DNA of 63,958 nucleotides, filler included, from Octopus bimaculoides (taxonomy: Eukaryota): the NCBI RefSeq assembly GCF_001194135.2. It is 5 parts of 5 records of this genome, joined end to end, with 100 filler letters (N's around TTAATTAATTAA, not from the genome) between each part and the next. Parts side by side here need not be neighbours in the genome. Positions count along the whole stretch, not along the records: positions 15,153 to 43,481 come from NC_068989.1; 4 more parts are not named here. The stretch is one strand, 5' to 3'. This document shows positions 3,536-40,572 of the stretch, piece by piece (position 1 is the stretch's first letter; each line of letters opens with the position of its first letter). The notes below the pieces were generated by a model. It saw only the letters and a list, made by a program, of their open reading frames with translations. It did not search any database and was not told the origin of the DNA. The translations under genes and the position numbers were made by a program.

Positions 3536-4618
3536 TTACCTCGTCCCAATTCTTATCCATCTGGAGGTTTGGTCCGAACCAAACCCCAAGCAACTTTAAC
3601 GGTCCGTCCATTCAGCGTTCAACGACGCTGTTGAACGGCGTGGACTTACCTTCCCAGGGGCTGAATTGCAAGCCCACCGACTTATCCGGGTTAAGTTTTG
3701 CTCCCGTCAACTTTTCATATTCCTATAATGATGTGCCGACTACCTAGATTTCTGAGGTGTGCGAGACCATCACGGTGATGTTGTCCGCATAAGCCAACAC
3801 AGCTCTCCTGCGTCCCGGTTCGGGCGGGATGCCTGTAGCAGCTCCAGCTTCTGCAGTAAAGGCTCAAGAGTCAATACATACAGAAGGGAGGAGAGAGGGC
3901 AAACTTGACGGACCGATCGGGAGATCTGAATCGGAGATCTGAGGTGGCTATTAATTTTGACTACCGAGCGATCCAACCTCTGAAGACGGGGCCAAAGCCA
4001 GCCGCTTTGAGGAGAGCCTCCAGATATTGAAGGTCGACCCTATCGAATGTTTTCGATTGATCTAAATTGATCAGTGCACCACCGAAGCCAGGTTTACCCC
4101 CTCTCCTTTATATGATGTATCGTACGAGGTGGAGGTTGTCTTATATGAACCTAGTCGGGATTGTGCAGGTTTGCGCCTACCCAACCCAGTCCTCGACGAC
4201 GAGCGCCAACCCTTTCGCTAATACCCTGGCCAAAATCTTGAACCCTGTGTTAAGCAGAGTTATGGGCCTTAAATTATCTTATGTGTCTCTCTTGTTTTAA
4301 ACTTTCCTTATCAGCGCCACTAGTCCCTGGATTACAGAACTGGGAATACTCCCGTTCTGCTATCAGTTGCAGTAGAGCGCTTCGAGGAGATCAGAGAACA
4401 AGTCTGGCATACTTACGTAAAGTTCATCTAAACCTGGTGACTTGCGCCTCCTGCAACCGGTAGGGCATCCTGAATTTCGACTAAAGTTATTTAACTTCCA
4501 TAGCGCTCAGCGTCGACCATCGAGAGACGCGGGAAGCCGTTTAGGTAGGGACTGAAGTCTGCTACCATCTCCGCTCCGCCCCTCCCTACGAACAACCGAG
4601 CAAAGTGCTGGCATGAGT
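3535..4618 (-). mobile_element. L1/Tx1-clade non-LTR retrotransposon RT fragment (decayed)
   Basis: GC-rich block. The minus strand encodes KSPGLD-like, RPITLLNTGFKILARVLAK, RSVRQxCPLSxLLY, YADN (3780-3791; YADD with D>N) and GAKLNPDKS...GVWFGP...KNWDEV motifs, with frameshifts. Confidence 0.85.
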
Positions 4619-4619
4619 C

Positions 4620-6198
4620 CACCCAAAATCTGACATAGAAAGGTTATATATACAACATACAGAAGGTGGGACAGGCCTTATACAGTTGGAAAACTATTAT
4701 AAAATAACCACAATAGGACTGCAAAAATACCTACTTCAGAAGCAAGGAAAACTAATACAAATAGCCACAAAACACGAGCAAAACAAAAAACTGTTTTCAG
4801 TATTTAAGGAAGCTGACAAATACAAACAAGAAATCATACTACCTAATAAAGAAGAAGAAGAAGAAGAAGAAGAAGAAGAAGAAGAAGAAGAAGAAGAAGA
4901 AGAAGAAGAAGAAGAANNNNNNNNNNNNNNNNNNNNNNNNNNNNNNNNNNNNNNNNNNNNNNNNNNNNNNNNNNNNNNNNNNNNNNNNNNNNNNNNNNNN
5001 NNNNNNNNNNNNNNNNNNNNNNNNNNNNNNNNNNNNNNNNNNNNNNNNNNNNNNNNNNNNNNNNNNNNNNNNNNNNNNNNNNNNNNNNNNNNNNNNNNNN
5101 NNNNNNNNNNNNNNNNNNNNNNNNNNNNNNNNNNNNNNNNNNNNNNNNNNNNNNNNNNNNNNNNNNNNNNNNNNNNNNNNNNNNNNNNNNNNNNNNNNNN
5201 NNNNNNNNNNNNNNNNNNNNNNNNNNNNNNNNNNNNNNNNNNNNNNNNNNNNNNNNNNNNNNNNNNNNNNNNNNNNNNNNNNNNNNNNNNNNNNNNNNNN
5301 NNNNNNNNNNNNNNNNNNNNNNNNNNNNNNNNNNNNNNNNNNNNNNNNNNNNNNNNNNNNNNNNNNNNNNNNNNNNNNNNNNNNNNNNNNNNNNNNNNNN
5401 NNNNNNNNNNNNNNNNNNNNNNNNNNNNNNNNNNNNNNNNNNNNNNNNNNNNNNNNNNNNNNNNNNNNNNNNNNNNNNNNNNNNNNNNNNNNNNNNNNNN
5501 NNNNNNNNNNNNNNNNNNNNNNNNNNNNNNNNNNNNNNNNNNNNNNNNNNNNNNNNNNNNNAAGTAACTGCAGAATATGTGGCGATGGACAAGAAATATA
5601 TTTTCTCTGGCTGCCCAGTCCTGGCTAAGAAGGAATATATTCACAGACACGACAGTGCTGGGACCTACATACACTGGAAGCTATGCCAACACTATGGAAT
5701 TACAACAGAAAAAAGATGGTATAGACACACGCCAGAAAAGGTCACAGAAAACGAGAAAGCAACCATACTCTGGGATATGCCAATACACACAGATAGAGAA
5801 ATTAAGGCCAATAGGCCAGATATAGTTGTCAGAGATCATAAAGGAAAAAAAATGCTTTCTAATTGATGTATCAATACCAGCAGATGACAACGTTTCCCTA
5901 AAAGAAATAGAGAAACTTTCAAAATACAAAGACCTGGAAATAGGTAACTCGAATGTGGAATCTAAAATAGAAACAATTCCTATCATAGAAGGCGCCTTAG
6001 GTATGATAAAACAGCAGGACGTACAAATATATATAAGATACAGAAAATTGCACTACTGGGCACTGCACACATCCTACGCAAAACACTTTCAATACAGTAA
6101 CCATAAGAGCATCACAGCAAACCACAGCACATACCCAAGGCACACAGAGCTGCGCTCGGTAGTCAAATGAAAGCACGCTATAAAAATAAAACTACTGA
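4620..6198 (+). mobile_element. 5'-truncated R4/Dong-clade RLE non-LTR retrotransposon (spans an N gap)
   Basis: HPKSDIERLYIQHTEGGTGL at 4620; CRICG..SGCPVLAKKEYIHRHD zinc knuckle remnant; ILWDMPIHTDREIKANRPDIVV..LIDVSIP..EKLSKYKDLEI RLE core; GTAHILRK then stop at 6098-6100; ~100-nt 3' UTR; (TAA)n tail. Confidence 0.9.
4851..4916 (+). repeat. (GAA)22 tract running into a gap, in frame within the R4 ORF
   Basis: Directly visible; gives poly-Glu in ORF 4686-. Confidence 0.95.
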
Positions 6199-6256
6199 AT
6201 AATAATAATGATGATAATAATAATAATATTAATAATAATAATAACAATAATAATAA
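6198..6256 (+). repeat. (TAA)n microsatellite at the R4/Dong 3' end
   Basis: Directly visible. Confidence 0.9.
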
Positions 6257-6409
6257 CTTAAAATTTTGGAACAACAACAACGCTAATAATAAATATTTTA
6301 ATGAAAATTAGTATTCATTCGTTTATATTTTATTACCTACTTACATTGTACTATCAAGCAATAACTCTGTAGTGCAGTATTTTATTTCAAAGTTTTCTAT
6401 TATATTCAA

Positions 6410-6810
6410 ATCACTGTACGTAATACCTGTACACAGTTCCAGTATGTTCAGCAATTTTAAGCGCATGGAATTTTTGTTATGTATTGTAGATATGTATTTT
6501 TTATTATTCCCATGGAACCTGTTATTATGAGGAAATTTCTGTTTTTAATCCCCAAATTCTTATTTTCTCTACCATTATTTTGGGAACGCTGCTCCATTTA
6601 CAGTCAGAAACAATTTGATTAATCGTTTGTTCCGAAACTTCACAAGCTCTTCAGTTACGTTTTGTATTCCACTTCATTATGTGCATGTTTCGGTTTTAGC
6701 TTTGAAGCATGCGCTTCTCATCCTATCTATGAAATCTTTTCTTTATCCAACTCTGCTTTGTTTAGTCTTGCAAGGTATCGGCCATGTAGCGGATCTTATT
6801 GTCATAATGT
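6410..6810 (-). mobile_element. Second R4/Dong remnant, internally deleted
   Basis: The minus strand encodes PLHGRYLARLNKAELDKEK (includes 6771-6792), KAKTE, *RACEVSEQTINQIVSDC (knuckle, 6600-6653), then almost directly IRIWGLKTE..IITGSMGIIK..YITKIP..VLR. Confidence 0.75.
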
Positions 6811-6984
6811 TGACATAGCGTGTTGCAATTGAATTTTCAGCTCAATTTGGTGTTCATTTATTTTAACTAATTTCTCTTGTTCTTTCGTTTTCCTTACAAA
6901 TATTTGTTACATAAGGGTCCCTTTTATATTTGTGAACATTTTTGCACAACGAATTGCGAATGCCATAACCAGCACCAACATCCT

Positions 6985-7050
6985 CCGCCTCCTCCCCCAC
7001 CATCACCACCATCTTTTCATCCTCCTCCTGATCATCATCGTCGTCATCAT

Positions 7051-7082
<32 letters not shown>

Positions 7083-7090
7083 GCAGTAAC
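6985..7090. repeat. Compound (CCT)/(CAT)/(CAG) trinucleotide tract
   Basis: Directly visible. Confidence 0.85.
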
Positions 7091-8814
7091 AACACTGACA
7101 CCACGCCTAGAAAGCACTATATTGATGAAATCAGCTACGGTTGTAGGAGGATTGAACGTCAGCAAATGTAACAGTAACAACTAAAAAGTTGAGTTACAGC
7201 AGCAATGAAAAAAGCCATTGTCTTAACAAAAGTAACGAATTTATTGATTCATTACAGCCTGATATCGATGGCGTAGTGCTTGGAAATGATATGTAAAAAA
7301 AAAAAAAAGAAAAAAAAAACGTCATTAATAAGCGACCTGCTGTGGTGATTTTTATGCAAAGCGAAATCAGTCGAAGTCTTAAATGGGCCATCATATACAG
7401 GTGAATCAGCCGTAAAATGAGAGCGCTAGAGAGTCTTAAACCTGCCAGGGCGAGTAGAAGATATGAAATGTGTGGGAGGATGCCAAGTCACATCAAAGAA
7501 GAAGATTGGAAAAAAAAAACAAAAAAATTCCCGAAATCATATGGGCTGCGTATGACGTCCAAATCTATCTGCTAGAAATAGTAGTAAGATCTTTTTCATA
7601 TTACACATTATCACATTGAAAAGAGACCGTCACATTGGAGGAAATACCGTGTGTCCCAGAATTAACTATTTATGAATTAACTGTAGATAGTTAATTCATA
7701 TGTAGATAATACTCGGATATACTTTATAATCCTAGATACGCAATTTCCAAGAAAAACGAAGTGACTGTGCCTAATAAGGCTTAGCCAGGGCCGACATACA
7801 CTTAGAAATAACAGTATTCAACACTAGGGAAAATTTGGGGAAAAATTTGTGAAGGTTCTGTTGCCATTCAATTAAGAGTAAAACACTCATCTTTAAGTAT
7901 TCAGTGTATTCTTTGCTTTCTTTCGTTGACGCTTGTATGTGTGCGTGTATATGTGTGCGTGAATATATAGAACTCAAGTACTGTGTGAATGTGATTAAAA
8001 TAGCGTAGAAAAGAGTCGCAAGACGCATTTTTCTATACGTGCAGCTAGGAAACATACGTGTAGACCAAAGACGCCATGTTTGAATAATATCTGTAGTGAC
8101 AGTTTGTCACACCTGGAAACCCAGCCGAAAAGTGTAATGGTGTCTGCGTCTGACAGGACCCTATGGAGGACATATTTGCAGTCTCTACTCCACGAATCTC
8201 TAAGGATCTGTAGGCAGAAAAATAGGTGTATATGAATGTATATATATATGTTTATGTATACATGTATATATATATATTACACGTATGTATGTATGTATAT
8301 ATATATATTTATATACACAAACATATATATATATATANNNNNNNNNNNNNNNNNNNNNNNNNNNNNNNNNNNNNNNNNNNNTTAATTAATTAANNNNNNN
8401 NNNNNNNNNNNNNNNNNNNNNNNNNNNNNNNNNNNNNAGAAGGAGGAAGAGCTGAGTCGTGATTATGGTGGTGGTGGTGGTGGTGGTGGTGGCGTTCAGT
8501 CGAGAGTCCGTTCGTTAGTGAAGTCAATTCATTTTGATTGGTTGTGCTGGCCGTTGGCAGCCGACATCGTTGGATCAATGCAAAGATGTTTTGATGGCTT
8601 CAAGTGGTAGGTGGCGCTGCGACTTGTCACTTTCAGCAGCCGATCAGTTTTAAGCTTGTTGAAAAACTTGAGGCTAGGGATGGTGGTGGTATTGGTGTTG
8701 GTGCCAGTGCTGGTGGTAATGGTGGTAATGACCGCGGTGGCGGGGGATGTGGATCGCTGATGAAGACGTTCGTAAATATGGCAGTTGAAAGATAACTTGG
8801 ATAGGAAAAAGAAA

Positions 8815-15047: not shown

Positions 15048-15265
15048 ATTTTNNNNNNNNNNNNNNNNNNNNNNNNNNNNNNNNNNNNNNNNNNNNTTAA
15101 TTAATTAANNNNNNNNNNNNNNNNNNNNNNNNNNNNNNNNNNNNNNNNNNNNACACACACACACACACAAGCACACACACGCACATACACAGAAACACAC
15201 ACATATACACATTATATATATAAATAAGCATTAATATGCATGTATGTATATATATATATACATAT

Positions 15266-15420
15266 ATACGACGGGCTTCTTTCAGTTTCCGTCTACCAAA
15301 TCCACTCACAAGGCTTTGGTCGGCCCGAGGCTATAGTAGAAAACACTTGCCCAAGGTGCCACGCAGTGGGACTGAACCCGGAACCATGTGGTTTGTAAGC
15401 AAGCTACTTACCACACAGCC
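15266..15420 (-). mobile_element. SINE family C, 5' half
   Basis: Reverse complement of the family C head; abuts the microsatellite and gap. Confidence 0.9.
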
Positions 15421-19923: not shown

Positions 19924-20689
19924 AATATATATATATATATATANNNNNNNNNNNNNNNNNNNNNNNNNNNNNNNNNNNNNNNNNNNNNNNNNNNNNNNNN
20001 NNNNNNNNNNNNNNNNNNNNNNNNNNNNNNNNNNNNNNNNNNNNNNNNNNNNNNNNNNNNNNNNNNNNNNNNNNNNNNNNNNNNNNNNNNNNNNNNNNNN
20101 NNNNNNNNNNNNNNNNNNNNNNNNNNNNNNNNNNNNNNNNNNNNNNNNNNNNNNNNNNNNNNNNNNNNNNNNNNNNNNNNNNNNNNNNNNNNNNNNNNNN
20201 NNNNNNNNNNNNNNNNNNNNNNNNNNNNNNNNNNNNNNNNNNNNNNNNNNNNNNNNNNNNNNNNNNNNNNNNNNNNNNNNNNNNNNNNNNNNNNNNNNNN
20301 NNNNNNNNNNNNNNNNNNNNNNNNNNNNNNNNNNNNNNNNNNNNNNNNNNNNNNNNNNNNNNNNNNNNNNNNNNNNNNNNNNNNNNNNNNNNNNNNNNNN
20401 NNNNNNNNNNNNNNNNNNNNNNNNNNNNNNNNNNNNNNNNNNNNNNNNNNNNNNNNNNNNNNNNNNNNNNNNNNNNNNNNNNNNNNNNNNNNNNNNNNNN
20501 NNNNNNNNNNNNNNNNNNNNNNNNNNNNNNNNNNNNNNNNNNNNNNNNNNNNNNNNNNNNNNNNNNNNNNNNNNNNNNNNNNNNNNNNNNNNNNNNNNNN
20601 NNNNNNNNNNNNNNNNNNNNNNNNNNNNNNNNNNNNNNNNNNNNNNNNNNNNNNNNNNNNNNNNNNNNNNNNNNNNNNNNNNNNNNNNT

Positions 20690-21870
20690 GAACAGTATGG
20701 GAAGCTTCAGATGTGAGCTTTACTGCCCTTTCAACACTCTGAGAATGTGAAGGCAAATGAAGCAGTTCCAGCTTGTTGCCAATCAGTAATGCTTCTTGAA
20801 GTTCCTGGTCAGGAAAGTCTTCTGTGAGAGCAGGTTCACAGATCCCACTTTGAGAAACGTTGAATAATGCTGACCAGTGTGTGGCGTAAATATTGATGTT
20901 TGTGATCCTCTTTAGCCATTTCTTGACTGGCTTCCCACTTCTGAAAGAATAACAATAAATTTAGTTTTTATATTAATATAAAATTGGAGCTCTCATGGCC
21001 GAGTGGATAAGGTACTGGATCCCCACGCCTTGGTCTAGTGTTCGATGCCCAACGAAAACGGACACAAAATTTTTTCAGTGCAGGTAGAGAGAACTCGTCC
21101 ACGGGGCGGGAGACCGAGAATTGCCCGTGCACAAGGCTCTCTGTACTGAACACACAGAACACAGCCACTTACAACATTACTATCTTCCTTCCCTCATCTG
21201 TCTTTACACTCACAACATATTAAGCTTCCATCTCTCGGAGCCCGCCTAAGGGGTTTCAATCCACTACTCCCGCAACGCAGACAAGTAGTTCTCCCTTGAT
21301 CTGCAGAGGGGCTTCCTTGGTTGGTGGCAAAGACATATTTACACGATTTCTTCCACCTGAGGTTAAGTAAAAACTTGATTGAACATTAAGGGTGAAAAGT
21401 AGCTCTAAACCCTTAACCTAACCCCTTAATCCCTATTAGTGTCAAAATTTCTCATTTTAAATTAAAATTTAATTATAATAACAGTTCGATAAATCCCCAT
21501 AATCGAATTATTTTACATTTGAAAATTTATAAATGTACACCTGATGCAGATAATTTTATTGAGAGCAGCTACTTTCACTTCCAAGTATTCAGACTTCATC
21601 ATCGAGTACAGCACAGTAATAGAATTTTCAATAGAATCTTCTAACATGCTGCTAGAACACTTTTGTATTTCCAGCGTTCATGTTTTGAATAACCAGCATC
21701 TTATTAGGTGGTAGTAAAATCTGTTGGATAGACGTCTAAAATCATTATGTGTTAATGTATGTTTAATTCGGTAGGTTTACCTGATGAAACGTAACCATGT
21801 TCTACAGTCGAAATATGTCATCCCTAGCTTCTGCTAAGTTTGCCTACGAGGAAAATTTCTCTTCTGTGAT
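20690..21870 (-). mobile_element. hATm-like DNA transposase remnant split by a GT-AG intron (20941-21540)
   Basis: The downstream segment 20940->20690 is stop-free for 83 codons: NINIYATHWSAL..EPALTE..LPSHSQSVERAVKLTSEASHTV. The upstream segment ends ENSITVLYSMMKSEYLEVKVAALNKIICI, and splicing joins the two in frame. Further upstream motifs are frameshifted. The family name comes from motif recall. Confidence 0.65.
20989..21056 (+). mobile_element. tRNA-derived SINE head inside the putative intron
   Basis: A box TGGCCGAGTGG(20996-21006), B box GTGTTCGATGCCC(21038-21050). Confidence 0.6.
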
Positions 21871-25329: not shown

Positions 25330-26915
25330 AATAGGTTTGGTTAAAATTATCAGGTAAAATATTAATATTATTCATATTACTGTCGTACTGTCACATGGGC
25401 ATCTATCATAAAACGATTACCTAGATTAGCATCAATACTATTATAAAATTCATTTAACTTAGTTTTATTATTTGCTGTAATAATCTGGGCTAAATTCCTG
25501 CATGTTGAAAAAGAAATTCTAATTGTTTTGCTATTAAATATATTGTGATATTTTTGGCCATTCTTAGAATGTTTCCTAAAAACGTGTAAAATCTTATTAA
25601 GTTTACAATCAATATTATATGTTAGCATAGATTGCACCATATGATATCATTACTAATAACGTTATCTTCTTTATTCTGTAAGTTACGATAAGTTAATATT
25701 TTATTCCGTATATGTTGGTTGCTACGGGGATACTGTTGTGCATTGATATCGTTTTTGTTAAGCGTGTAGTTGTCTCATTCTTAGTTAGGCCTTTTTTTAG
25801 ATTTATTTCCTTTATTATTGAAATTTATTTCCTTTATTATTGAAATTTTGACCAAACCAATATTTGTTATTATTCTTATCATTTTTAGAATTAATTGTTA
25901 CATATATAATGTTCACAACTGAAGATGTTTTAGTATTAGCAACAGTAAGTATAAATATAAATTTCTCTTTATATCCAGCTCTTTTGAGAGCAGTTATAAT
26001 AATCACAATTATTAAGGAAAACAGTCTCATTTGATGATAATCTAGATATCCTTATAGTGATATTCCTAACAACAGATGCAATGTTACTCCTGGGATGACT
26101 TGAGTCATAGCTTACATATATTAAACTTTCATTTTGCTTATGGTAAAGGACATTAATCCCTGTGCTGAAATCAAAGGTTATATCAAGAAAATTAACGACA
26201 ATAAACTCATTTTCAATACTAGGTCATATCTCGCGTAAAAGGCACGAAGATCTTTTTTATATTTAGCAAACTCCCTTAGGTTACAGTCACCCACAATGAA
26301 TAATCCATCATCCCAATATAGATCACCGTCAATGTCAACAAATTCCTGATGTAGTTGACTTAGAAGATAGTTACCAACAAGATCAGTAACTTGAGCTGAG
26401 TCACTTGATCCCATAGTGATATCAAAATGGTTATATCTGTCTTTCCTTAACAAATAGCCACCCTCAAACTCAAATATGCATTTACGAGCAGCTAAGATGA
26501 TACCAGTTTCTTTTCTTGAAAGATCAGAACGATGCCTTCCGACAATTAAGGCCTCATTCAGTATAATGGGGCTAATGGAAGAGTAGTACTTATCTATGTC
26601 GAACTGTATAAATTTGGTCCTATCTCTTTCTTTATTTGGTTTAAACCAATCAATTATCCTAGAAGAATAATCCAAAAGTTCCAGCGTAACACCTGCGATA
26701 ATAGCAATTCTACCAATGTCATAACTAGATGGAGATATAAGACGAACTGTAGGTGAAGTTATGAAGATGAGCTTATGATCCTTTCAAGTAATCTTGTGTG
26801 TTCTTGGGTGGTAAGGTTCCGTTCGGTCATCCAGATTCAGATCTTCTACAATTCTTTTCGTTTGTCGGTTAATCTTCCTAACAGTTTGAATGTCAGTTTT
26901 CTTATATTTGGGAGA
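25330..26915 (-). mobile_element. Penelope-like element (Naiad-type) RT and thumb, decayed, lacking the endonuclease
   Basis: LDDR..KDHK..RLISP; IDWFK..FIQFDIDKYYSSI; FDITMGSSDSAQVTDLVG; LYWDDGL; VNFLDIT; SHP; KRAGY; IFNSKTIRISFSTCRNLAQII. Confidence 0.85.
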
Positions 26916-31017: not shown

Positions 31018-31359
31018 TTATAAATCTAATATTTTCCTATCCTTCCTTAATACCGGTTCCCACATGCTGTTCATATCTGGACTCGGTCTGCTTAGGAGAT
31101 TGTTGTGTCCTAGCATATGTGCTGCTTCGTGGTGCTCTCTGTCTATTATTTTAACTTCATCCCACAGGGGGAGGTGGTCTCCATTTTTCCATATATGATC
31201 AGCTATACCCGATTTATCAATATCTCCTCGTGTCACAGCTTTGCGATGTTCCTCTGTTTCGCCTTTGTATAACCTATCACAGCTACATGGGATGGAGTAC
31301 ACGCAGTCTTTGGTCATATTCTCTTCTATTGGTGGTTTTACTCGAAGGAGATATTTGCA
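31018..31359 (-). mobile_element. Penelope-type GIY-YIG endonuclease 3' fragment with internal in-frame deletions
   Basis: KDCVYSIPCSCDRLYKGET|EEH..SGIADHIW..PLWDEVKIIDREH|HEAAHM. Confidence 0.85.
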
Positions 31360-31972
31360 TCTGTATGTATGTCTCCGTGGGTGTGTGGGTGTGTGTGTGT
31401 GTACATACATAGATATACATCATCAGATTTTCTTCTGTTTGTTTTATTTGCGATAATTAGATGAGACATCTTTCTATATTCAGCTACACTTACCTTCATG
31501 TATACATATACTATGTCATTAAATTTATGTTATTCATAATAGAACCAGTTCTTCTATTCTATTTTTGCCTTCTGTGAATGATTCCTTATAGTTTATGATT
31601 TACGTCCTCGATTGACAAGGATTCTTCTACTTTGGGTTACTTTCTTTTTTCACCTTTAAGACTGAAGCAGTAATCCCATACTTTACGTGGTATAATTCTA
31701 TCATCAGTAGAATAAGTCACGTACCACCATCCCTTTAATATGTGTAGCCTTGTATTAATGTAACAAATTATAACAGACATCAGTATTTGCAAAATAGATT
31801 ATAATAGATGTTATTTTTTAAAATAAAAACACTTAACTATAACGAAATAAAATGTAACAGTTTTTATAAAAATACTTTAGTATAACGAACTATAATAAAC
31901 ATTACGTTTTTAATATAAATTTTTTAATTATAACGAATTATAACTTATAAGACATATAAGCGTAACGAACTA

Positions 31973-39260: not shown

Positions 39261-39490
39261 CTCTTTTACTCTTTTACTCTTTTACTTGTTTCAGTCATTT
39301 GACTGTGGCCATGTTGGATCACCGACTTAAGTCGAGCAAATCGACCCCAGGACTTTTTCTTTGTAAGCCAAGTACTTATTCTATCAGTCTCTTTTGCCGA
39401 ACTGCTAAGTTACGGGGACATAAACACTTCAGCATCGGTTGTCAAACGATGTTGGTGGGACAAACATAGACACACACAAATAAATATATA
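39261..39490 (-). mobile_element. SINE family C, 3' half with (GAGTAAAA)n tail
   Basis: Reverse complement of 40350-40572. Confidence 0.85.
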
Positions 39491-40100: not shown

Positions 40101-40166
40101 GTCTGTCTGTCTGATTGTCTGCATATACTCCTTTATTTATATATTTATTATTATTATCATTATATA

Positions 40167-40572
40167 GGCGTAGGAGTGGCTGTGTGGTATGTAGCTTGCT
40201 TACCAACCACACGATCCCGGGTTCAGTCCCACTGCGTGGCATCTTGGGCTAGTGTCTTCTACTATAGCCTCGGGCCGACCAATGCCTTGTGAGTGGATTT
40301 GGTAGATGGAAACTGAAAGAAGCCTGTCGTATATATGTATATATATATGTATGTGTGTATGTGTTTGTATGTCTGTGTTTGTCCCCCCAACATCGCTTGA
40401 CAACCGATGCTGGTGTGTTTATGTTCCCGTAACTTAGCGGTTCGGCAAAGAGACCGATAGTATAAGTACGAGGCTACCAAAGAATAAGTCGTGGGGTCGA
40501 TTTGCTCGACTAAAGGCGGTGCTCCAGCATGGCCACAGTCAAAAGACTGAAACAAGTAAAAGAGTAAAAGAG
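40167..40572 (+). mobile_element. SINE family C, best-preserved full-length copy
   Basis: A box TGGCTGTGTGG, B box GGGTTCAGTCCC, internal (TA)/(TG), GAGTAAAAGAG tail; candidate TSD ATTATCATTAT (40153-40163/40573-40583, low complexity). Confidence 0.9.

What the first reader, a model, noticed from the sequence alone, without database searches (positions are those of the whole stretch)
20690..21870. Spliced DNA-transposase gene: a 600-nt GT-AG intron restores the frame
Seen: on the minus strand ATC AG|GTGTAC (21541/21540) and TTATTGTTATTCTTTCAG|A (20941/20940) bound a 600-nt segment. Removing it gives ..LYSMMKSEYLEVKVAALNKIICI-R-SGKPVKKWLKRITNINIYATHW..EPALT..PSHSQSVERAVKLTSEAS, the expected colinear motif order of this transposase family (recalled as hATm-like). 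The downstream exon is stop-free for 83 codons, while the upstream part is frameshifted. Inference: either an intron-bearing transposon, or an exapted exon still spliced to something else. The intron has also acquired a SINE head.
Basis: partly seen in the sequence, partly recalled or inferred. Interest (0 to 1): 0.7.

Follow-up and report, generated by a model that had tools for sequence, protein, structure and literature searches.

The report
Decayed intron-bearing hAT-like transposon fragment
This is the broken 3' end of an old hAT-like "cut-and-paste" transposon whose transposase gene carries a real, conserved intron, here swollen from 160 to 600 bases by a SINE-like insertion; it is an ordinary piece of dead mobile DNA.

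Summary
On the minus strand ...ATCAG|GTGTAC (21541/21540) and ...TTTCAG|A (20941/20940) bound exactly 600 nt. Joining the flanks gives a peptide that matches homologues without a break across the junction (best E 5e-36).

Five other copies carry a GT..AG intron at the same codon (phase 2, 92-160 nt, or cut off by a contig end). These are L002 and L005 (unidentified assembly), L003, L004 and L007. Fourteen database proteins end exactly at ..IR. Four DNA copies (L001, L008, L010, L006) lack the intron precisely.

Three points need correction:
- The native intron is 160 nt. The other 440 nt (20986-21425) are a SINE-like insertion with Pol III A/B boxes. An Octopus vulgaris copy (L009) has it at the same site.
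- The window holds only a 5'-truncated remnant (21617..20691, then an assembly gap). No homology is detectable upstream, so that part is missing rather than frameshifted.
- Nothing indicates selection. dN/dS is 0.6-0.9, the donor has decayed to GTGTAC, and a stop-free exon 2 is expected 39% of the time under neutrality.

The family is large (12,245 clusters) and has no Pfam model. It is hAT-like by 8-bp TSDs, TAGGG termini and a Hermes-like predicted fold. Introns in DNA transposons are well known, so interest is low.

The parts
21541..21617 (-). Last 25 codons plus 2 nt of transposase exon 1 (TVLYSMMKSEYLEVKVAALNKIICI-R). Homology to the family begins here, and the roughly 565 codons that should lie upstream are missing.
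   Evidence: blastn to L005 and L002 starts at 21615. tblastn with P0025 covers 21617..21540. No other fragment was found anywhere in 15153-43481.
21426..21540 (-). 5' part (115 nt) of the ancestral intron. The donor is GTGTAC, decayed from the GTAAGC seen in L005.
   Evidence: Colinear with the L005 intron (84% identity) and the L002 intron.
20986..21425 (+). 440-nt SINE-like insertion inside the intron, antisense to the transposase. It has an A box at 20996-21006, a B box at 21038-21049 and a degenerate CCCTAA-like 3' tail.
   Evidence: Absent from the otherwise colinear introns of L002 and L005. The window intron without it is exactly 160 nt, the L005 length. The A/B-box pattern occurs once in the window against 0 expected. 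The same element abuts the same intron position in O. vulgaris copy L009.
20941..20985 (-). 3' part (45 nt) of the ancestral intron, with the pyrimidine tract and acceptor ...TTATTGTTATTCTTTCAG.
   Evidence: Aligns to L002, L005 and L009.
20691..20940 (-). Transposase exon 2: 83 open codons (SGKPVKKW...SHSQSVERAVKLTSEASHTV), including the predicted catalytic glutamate codon GAA at 20732-20730. It is cut off by the assembly gap.
   Evidence: 89-91% nt identity to exon 2 of L005 and L002. tblastn to P0021 gives E 2e-26. The E of SVER is present in every sequence that covers that column.
19944..20688 (.). Assembly gap (745 N). It should hide the last ~38 codons of exon 2, the ~275-nt 3' UTR and the 3' terminal inverted repeat.
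   Evidence: In L005 the distance from ..SHTV to the 3' terminus is about 390 nt. No TIR-like sequence occurs anywhere in the window.

Best explanation
The region is a dead, 5'-truncated remnant of a roughly 3.75-kb hAT-like DNA transposon. In intact relatives the transposase (about 720 aa) is encoded in two exons.

Exon 1 (about 592 codons) encodes:
- a Cys-rich N-terminus;
- the RNase-H-like core with D264, D348 and the CxxH motif;
- the alpha-helical insertion domain with W479.

A short AT-rich phase-2 GT-AG intron (92-160 nt) follows. Exon 2 (about 121 codons) carries the third catalytic residue (E662, in SQSVERAVK) and the C-terminal tail. Splicing is therefore needed to make an active enzyme. 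An unspliced message stops immediately (AGG TAA or AGG TGA) and lacks the catalytic glutamate.

In the octopus subfamily, a 440-nt SINE-like retroposon inserted antisense into the 160-nt intron of a source copy, making it 600 nt. At least two descendants carry it: this window and an O. vulgaris copy.

The window copy later lost everything upstream of codon ~567 and its donor mutated. It has drifted about 10% from its relatives without detectable constraint.

Shown: the anatomy, positional conservation of the intron, its precise absence in some relatives, the insertion, the truncation, the TSDs and TIRs, and the fold similarity.

Inferred: that the intron is actually spliced in active copies, the catalytic roles of D/D/E, and the SINE nature of the insertion.
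For: Colinearity across the junction.

The same-position intron with GT..AG, a pyrimidine tract and 70-79% AT, in copies whose intron sequences differ, so these are different lineages:
- L005: 160 nt, GTAAGC..TTTCAG
- L002: 143 nt
- L003: 98 nt, GTGAGC..TTTTTCAG
- L004: 92 nt, GTGAGT..TTTTAAG
- L007: GTAAAT.., cut off by the contig end

Open exons on both sides of the intron: L003 has 687 aa followed by 125 aa, L004 has 669 aa followed by 130 aa, and L005 exon 2 is intact to its stop. L004 carries a 5' TIR with flanking DNA, so it is genomic. Fourteen proteins end at ..IR.

Precise absence of the intron with the frame kept: L001, L008, L006 and L010.

The 440-nt insertion and the 160-nt remainder. 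It is shared with L009 at the identical head junction.

Truncation.

No sign of constraint:
- exons are 88-91% and the intron 84% identical to L005;
- dN/dS is 0.60-0.93, with 22 nonsynonymous against 8 synonymous codon changes;
- 39% of neutral 23-substitution mutants of the intact L005 exon 2 stay stop-free.

hAT-like nature:
- 17-bp TIRs TAGGGTAGGTCGATTTT / AAAATCGACCTGCCCTA;
- perfect 8-bp TSDs in L002 (CTGAACAC) and L001 (ACCCAGGG);
- AlphaFold model of P0021 with pLDDT 81, whose only significant PDB match is Hermes transposase 8sjd_B (E 2.6e-5, probability 1.00, 559 columns);
- D264, D348, C377, H380, W479 and E662 invariant in 41 full-length members.
Against: There is no RNA evidence of splicing; every locus examined is, or may be, DNA.

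The family matches no Pfam model, including the hAT dimerisation domain PF05699. It has no sequence-level PDB match. Foldseek TM-scores to Hermes are modest (0.30/0.41).

The SINE call is weak:
- ARAGORN and the Rfam tRNA model do not detect a tRNA;
- the TSD is at most 1 nt;
- no independent dispersed copy was found in the window, in 10 loci or in a metagenome scan.

The site pattern among the window, L009, L005 and L002 is star-like (2/1/2 informative sites). A single SINE insertion ancestral to the window and L009 is therefore inferred from the shared junction, not from the tree.
Confidence: 0.85

Rival explanations
1. The 600 nt is a one-off insertion into a continuous coding sequence, with TCAG as its target-site duplication. 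On this view it is not an intron.
For: Some family copies are continuous across the junction (L001, L008, L006, L010). 440 of the 600 nt really are a secondary insertion. TCAG does occur at both junctions.
Against: The remaining 160 nt lie at the same codon with GT..AG in at least five other copies from different sources, with unrelated intron sequences and lengths. L004's intron ends in TAAG, so TCAG is not a duplication. Fourteen proteins stop exactly at ..IR.
Confidence: 0.03
2. The fragment has been exapted. Exon 2, perhaps with the stub of exon 1, is still spliced into a host transcript and is kept open by selection.
For: Exon 2 is open for 83 codons, and acceptor signals are intact (pyrimidine tract plus CAG). 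O. vulgaris annotation contains a 'hypothetical protein' (P0020) built partly from another copy of this family.
Against: dN/dS is 0.6-0.9 against L005, and exon and intron divergence are similar. An open 83-codon exon is expected 39% of the time under neutrality. The donor has decayed to GTGTAC. No other coding exon or Pfam domain was seen nearby. The copy is one of several roughly equidistant paralogues. P0020 itself reads a frameshifted copy.
Confidence: 0.04
3. The conserved intervening sequence is an ancient insertion inherited by a non-functional lineage and is never spliced. On this view the intron-less copies are the only functional form.
For: There is no transcript evidence. In the midpoint-rooted NJ tree most deeper relatives are continuous across this position. 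Intron-less DNA copies with TIRs and TSDs exist (L001).
Against: Canonical donor, acceptor and pyrimidine tract are retained in five copies even though the intervening sequence has diverged beyond alignment. Long intact ORFs lie on both sides in L003, L004 and L005. The excision in L001, L008, L010 and L006 is exact to the base, as expected for loss of a spliced intron.
Confidence: 0.07

Closest known systems
hAT superfamily DNA transposons (Hermes, Ac, hobo, Tol2)
   Same: Shared features: 8-bp target-site duplications; short TIRs starting TAGGG (the YARNG type); a DDE RNase-H-like core interrupted by a large alpha-helical insertion domain; a CxxH motif and a conserved Trp; and the third catalytic residue in a C-terminal S..ER motif. 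Hermes is the only significant structural match. From general knowledge, Ac and Tol2 also have intron-containing transposase genes.
   Different: There is no hit to the Pfam hAT C-terminal dimerisation domain PF05699 or to any BED finger model. There is no sequence-level similarity to Hermes in PDB profile searches. The C-terminal motif reads SQSVERAVKL rather than the usual S..ERxFS.
hATm family of hAT transposons (Repbase group; described in PMC6004678)
   Same: The paper reports 8-9-bp TSDs and conserved termini 5'-TAGGGTG...CACCCTA-3'. This family has 8-bp TSDs and 5'-TAGGGTA...TGCCCTA-3'. Hydra is among the hosts.
   Different: The paper states that hATm-6 carries PF05699, and this family does not. 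No Repbase hATm sequence was available for direct comparison, so membership is untested.
P element of Drosophila (intron-regulated transposase)
   Same: An intron lies near the 3' end of the transposase gene, and retaining it would give a truncated protein without full catalytic capacity. The TSD is also 8 bp.
   Different: This is a resemblance of layout only. P transposase has a THAP domain, a GTP-binding insertion and 31-bp TIRs, none of which was seen here. No evidence of regulated splicing exists for this family. The in-frame stop after the donor follows automatically from a phase-2 GTRA donor.
tRNA-derived SINEs of cephalopods and other molluscs (OR1/OR2/OK of octopus, Ceph-SINEs, MetaSINEs; PMC4824008)
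   Same: The 440-nt insertion starts with Pol III A and B boxes at tRNA-like spacing and ends in a short degenerate repeat tail.
   Different: No tRNA model matches, there is no clear TSD, and no independent copy was found. No consensus of the published families was available for comparison.

Membership tests
hAT superfamily | 8-bp target-site duplication | tested here: met
   L002 has CTGAACAC on both sides and L001 has ACCCAGGG on both sides. L009 has a degenerate 6/8 match. In L005 the matching 8-mer is displaced by 4 nt. The window copy itself has no termini to test.
hAT superfamily | Short TIRs with 5'-YARNG termini | tested here: met
   17-bp TIR TAGGGTAGGTCGATTTT / AAAATCGACCTGCCCTA, 94% complementary. 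It is also present in L004 and L009.
hAT superfamily | DDE RNase-H-like catalytic domain split by an alpha-helical insertion domain, with CxxH and a conserved Trp | tested here: met
   The AF2 model (pLDDT 81) has the order b1-b2-b3-a1-b4-..-b5-a4-[helical 406-645]-a5. The top and only significant PDB match is Hermes 8sjd_B, E 2.6e-5. D264, D348, C377, H380, W479 and E662 are invariant. This rests on a predicted structure, and the catalytic roles are inferred.
hAT superfamily | C-terminal hAT dimerisation domain (Pfam PF05699) | tested here: not met
   No Pfam hit for the window peptide at E<=10, for the L002 conceptual protein, for 7 long members at E<=1 or for 41 full-length members at E<=0.01. 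The S..ER motif is present but divergent.
hATm family | Termini 5'-TAGGGTG / CACCCTA-3' and 8-9-bp TSD (PMC6004678) | tested here: inconclusive
   The termini here are TAGGGTA / TGCCCTA, which match 6 of 7 bases at each end. The TSD is 8 bp.
hATm family | Transposase clusters with Repbase hATm transposases | not testable with these tools
No Repbase or Dfam library was available.
Spliceosomal GT-AG intron | GT donor, AG acceptor, pyrimidine tract, AT-rich | tested here: met
   Window, L002, L005, L003 and L004, and the donor in L007. The window donor is weak (GTGTAC).
Spliceosomal GT-AG intron | Same position and phase in diverged homologues, and precise absence in others | tested here: met
   Phase 2 after ..ATCAG in all intron-bearing copies. 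Base-exact absence in L001, L008, L006 and L010. Fourteen proteins end at ..IR.
Spliceosomal GT-AG intron | Spliced junction observed in RNA | not testable with these tools
   No transcriptome search by DNA was available. The continuous contigs that could be judged carry UTR or terminal DNA, and are therefore DNA copies.
tRNA-derived SINE | Pol III A and B boxes at the 5' end | tested here: met
   TGGCCGAGTGG at 20996-21006 and GTGTTCGATGCC at 21038-21049. The pattern occurs once in the window against 0 expected in 100 shuffles.
tRNA-derived SINE | Recognisable tRNA-like head | tested here: not met
   ARAGORN finds none. There is no Rfam tRNA match even at E<=10 on the 600 nt alone.
tRNA-derived SINE | Many dispersed copies flanked by target-site duplications | tested here: not met
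   The TSD is at most 1 nt. The only other copy (L009) sits at the same position in a paralogous transposon copy. None was found elsewhere in the window, the loci, a protein-word search or a metagenome scan. The sampling of octopus DNA was very small.

The most novel reading that the evidence does not exclude
Two readings are not excluded.

First, the conserved phase-2 intron separates the catalytic glutamate from the rest of the transposase. Intron retention would therefore yield a DD-only protein ending ..SIR*. That protein could act as a splicing-controlled repressor of transposition, as in the P element.

Second, the intron is absent base-exactly in several closely related DNA copies (L001, L008, L010). 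This could mean that a cut-and-paste transposon family repeatedly passed through, or recombined with, reverse-transcribed spliced mRNA.
Probability: 0.1. Interest if true: 0.45.

Novelty: new member of a known kind. Interest (0 to 1): 0.15.

Why it matters
For this window it matters little. It is a dead transposon fragment, useful only for repeat annotation: mask 20691-21617 as hAT-like DNA transposon, with a nested SINE-like element at 20986-21425.

Three side results have modest value:
- The transposase family is very large (12,245 clusters at 50% identity with E<=0.001) yet has no Pfam model. Gene predictors therefore turn its fragments into 'hypothetical proteins', such as P0020 and P0099 in Octopus vulgaris.
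- The family offers a clean case of one intron position that is present or exactly absent among close relatives of a DNA transposon.
- The SINE-like element rode inside the intron of a transposon copy that gave rise to at least two descendant copies. This shows that introns are safe landing sites within mobile elements.

Tried and rejected
- Pfam on the joined peptide, on exon 2 alone, on the L002 conceptual protein, on seven long homologues and on 41 full-length members gave no meaningful family.
- PDB sequence-profile searches with A2 and A3 gave nothing relevant.
- ARAGORN and Rfam on the piece and on the 600 nt alone found no tRNA or other real RNA. The many miRNA-family hits are microsatellite artefacts below the gathering scores.
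- The search for the missing 5' part of the gene, or for a TIR, in the window found none.
- The search for further SINE copies found none. It covered blastn in the window and loci, a protein-word search with the ORF lying on the SINE and an exact 22-mer scan of metagenome contigs.
- The orthology test between the window and the O. vulgaris locus L009 failed. Only dispersed repeats are shared and they are not colinear, so the two are paralogous copies.
- Site patterns could not show whether the window and L009 form a clade (2/1/2).
- Literature searches for hATm gave one useful description (PMC6004678). Searches on cephalopods gave nothing.
- One look-up (P0001) failed for technical reasons.
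- I read the ORFs at 26181-26783 and 31021-31419 from memory as a Penelope-like RT and GIY-YIG domain. Pfam gave no hit even at E<=10, so this is left as an unverified impression.

Full report
**Observation.**
On the minus strand the sequence reads ...AAAATTATCTGCATCAG|GTGTACATTTATAAATTT... and ...TTTATTGTTATTCTTTCAG|AAGTGGGAAGCCAGTC.... The segment between 21540 and 20941 is exactly 600 nt. Read in the exon frame it has 15 stops.

Joining 21541 to 20940 gives TVLYSMMKSEYLEVKVAALNKIICIRSGKPVKKWLKRITNINIYATHW...SHSQSVERAVKLTSEASHTV. The downstream part is open for 83 codons until the N gap at 19944-20688.

Because 600 is divisible by 3, both exons are already in the same frame. Removal eliminates stops and does not restore a frame.

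**Is the join real?**
The joined 121-aa peptide finds 20 proteins (best E 5e-36). In the alignment they run straight across the junction, for example ..ALKKILSIRSGKPAKKRLKKITxINxEATHWS... The two flanks are thus adjacent parts of one protein family, and something has been interposed.

**Intron or insertion?**
I fetched contigs that encode relatives.

The closest are L002 and L005, both from ENA assembly ERZ25072293 (source organism not identified), at 88-92% nt identity. They carry an intervening segment at exactly the same place. L005 has 160 nt, CATCAG|GTAAGC...CTATTCTTTCAG|AAGTGGG. L002 has the same with a 17-nt deletion, 143 nt.

The window's segment aligns with these at both ends: 115 nt at the 5' end and 45 nt at the 3' end, 84-87% identity. 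It contains 440 extra bases at 20986-21425. With these removed it is exactly 160 nt.

More distant copies from other sources have unrelated, AT-rich GT..AG segments at the same codon and phase:
- L003 (Logan SRR28400121): 98 nt, GTGAGC..TTTTTCAG.
- L004 (a marine metagenome scaffold that also contains the 5' TIR and flank, hence DNA): 92 nt, GTGAGT..TTTTAAG.
- L007: donor GTAAAT, then the contig ends.

In L003 and L004 the exon-1 ORFs are intact (687 and 669 aa), and they are followed by open exon-2 ORFs. In L005 exon 2 is intact to its stop codon.

Fourteen database proteins, called as plain ORFs, end exactly at ..IR. This is what a phase-2 donor AG|GTAA or AG|GTGA produces.

Conversely, L001, L008, L010 and L006 lack the segment to the base and keep the frame. 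L001 is a DNA copy with both TIRs and a perfect TSD. L008 comes from a soil metagenome. L010 extends past the 3' terminus.

The evidence for a genuine spliceosomal intron is therefore:
- a conserved position;
- canonical signals kept despite complete sequence turnover;
- intact exons on both sides;
- base-exact loss in relatives.

TCAG is simply the exon-end and intron-end consensus, and L004 has TAAG.

In a midpoint-rooted NJ tree the intron-bearing sequences concentrate in one large clade. Intron-less members are nested inside it, and most deeper relatives are continuous across this position. That pattern suggests a gain at the base of the clade followed by repeated precise losses. This is only a rough tree of fragments.

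No RNA evidence was obtainable, so actual splicing remains inferred.

**The extra 440 nt.**
On the plus strand the insert begins GGAGCTCTCATGGCCGAGTGGATAAGG...GTGTTCGATGCC. This gives a Pol III A box (20996-21006) and B box (21038-21049) at tRNA-like spacing. The pattern occurs once in the window against none in 100 shuffles. The insert ends in a degenerate CCCTAA-like tail.

Several things do not fit a clean SINE call:
- It is not recognised as a tRNA by ARAGORN or Rfam.
- It has at most a 1-nt TSD.
- I found no independent copy.

An Octopus vulgaris copy of the transposon (L009, chromosome OX597814.1) carries the same element abutting the same intron base..GAGAGCTCC|AATTTTATAG... The rest of that copy is differently deleted and its flanks are not colinear with the window. 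The two are therefore paralogues, not orthologues.

The window, L009, L005 and L002 are about equally distant from each other (87-93% identity; informative sites 2/1/2). The simplest reading is that the element landed in the intron of a source copy, which then gave rise to further copies. I call it SINE-like with moderate confidence.

**State of the window copy.**
Homology to the family starts at about 21617. Neither tblastn with six homologues at E<=10 nor blastn with the whole L005 element finds anything else in 15153-43481. No TIR is present. The 'frameshifted upstream part' is therefore simply missing.

The donor is GTGTAC, against GTAAGC in L005.

Against L005, exons are 88-91% identical and the intron 84%. 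dN/dS is 0.60-0.93, with 22 nonsynonymous and 8 synonymous codon differences.

Simulating 23 random substitutions in the intact L005 exon 2 leaves it stop-free 39% of the time. The open 83 codons are therefore not evidence of selection. Exaptation is unsupported.

**What the family is.**
Full-length relatives are about 720 aa (P0021 is 713 aa). A profile search finds 12,245 cluster representatives at E<=0.001 and 1,571 at E<=1e-30. Named examples come from Hydra, Patella and Octopus.

No Pfam family matches, and no PDB sequence matches.

The elements have 17-bp TIRs, TAGGGTAGGTCGATTTT / AAAATCGACCTGCCCTA, and 8-bp TSDs. The TSDs are perfect in L002 and L001 and degenerate in L009.

An AlphaFold model of P0021 (pLDDT 81, pTM 0.69) shows an RNase-H-like b1-b2-b3-a1-b4..b5-a4 core, a large helical insertion (residues 406-645) and a final helix. 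Its only significant PDB match is the Hermes hAT transposase (8sjd_B, E 2.6e-5, probability 1.00, 559 columns). Mos1 mariner and Transib transposases follow with weak, non-significant matches.

D264, D348, C377xxH380, W479 and E662 are invariant among 41 full-length members.

The intron falls after residue 592. It therefore separates E662 (window codon 20732-20730) from the rest of the catalytic domain.

These features fit the hAT superfamily in TSD, termini and fold. The Pfam hAT dimerisation domain is not detected.

The published hATm family has termini TAGGGTG/CACCCTA, 8-9-bp TSDs and PF05699 (PMC6004678). The termini here are 6/7 identical and PF05699 is absent. Without Repbase the 'hATm' label cannot be tested.

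**How it works (inferred).**
An autonomous copy is transcribed. The short intron is spliced to join the DD-CxxH-W part to the E-bearing C-terminus, and the enzyme cuts and pastes elements bounded by the TAGGG termini, making 8-bp TSDs. Unspliced RNA would terminate at AGG-TAA or AGG-TGA and give a protein without the catalytic glutamate. That stop is an automatic consequence of a phase-2 GTRA donor, so any regulatory use (P-element-like) is speculation.

**Verdict.**
The interpretation as an intron-bearing transposon is supported for the family, but not as a live spliced gene at this locus.

The 600-nt size results from a nested SINE-like insertion. Introns in DNA-transposase genes are well known (Ac, Tol2, P from general knowledge). 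This is an ordinary decayed repeat, a new member of a known kind, and of low interest.

Noticed in passing
window 15262-15420, 39275-39482, 40164-40566: These three stretches are copies of one dispersed repeat. They are 85-97% identical to L009 22159-22579, where that repeat is nested inside the O. vulgaris transposon copy. This suggests the window comes from an octopus close to O. vulgaris.
   Followed up: partly
window 26181-26783 (-) and 31021-31419 (-): Two long ORFs (201 and 133 aa). From memory their motifs (FIQFDIDKYYSSI; VYSIPCSCDRLYKGET..) resemble a reverse transcriptase and a GIY-YIG endonuclease of a Penelope-like retroelement. Pfam gave no hit even at E<=10.
   Followed up: partly
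whole piece 15153-43481: The piece has 35% GC, five long N gaps and dense microsatellites such as (TG)n and (TA)n. The microsatellites produce dozens of sub-threshold Rfam 'miRNA' hits (mir-297, mir-466, MIR5512 and others), which are low-complexity artefacts.
   Followed up: yes
L005 3828-7581; L001; L010; L008: Closely related DNA copies of the same transposon family differ by base-exact presence or absence of the single intron. L005 against L010 is 80% nt identical. This implies repeated precise intron loss in a DNA transposon.
   Followed up: partly
protein family of P0021 (alignments A2, A3): This is a very large transposase family (12,245 clusters at E<=0.001) with no Pfam model. Fragments of it are annotated as hypothetical proteins in Octopus vulgaris, Patella caerulea and Hydra vulgaris.
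   Followed up: partly
L005 1838-2590: The neighbouring ORF on the L005 contig has a weak MADF DNA-binding domain hit in the precomputed table. It lies outside the transposon (element 3828-7581) and is unrelated to the finding.
   Followed up: no
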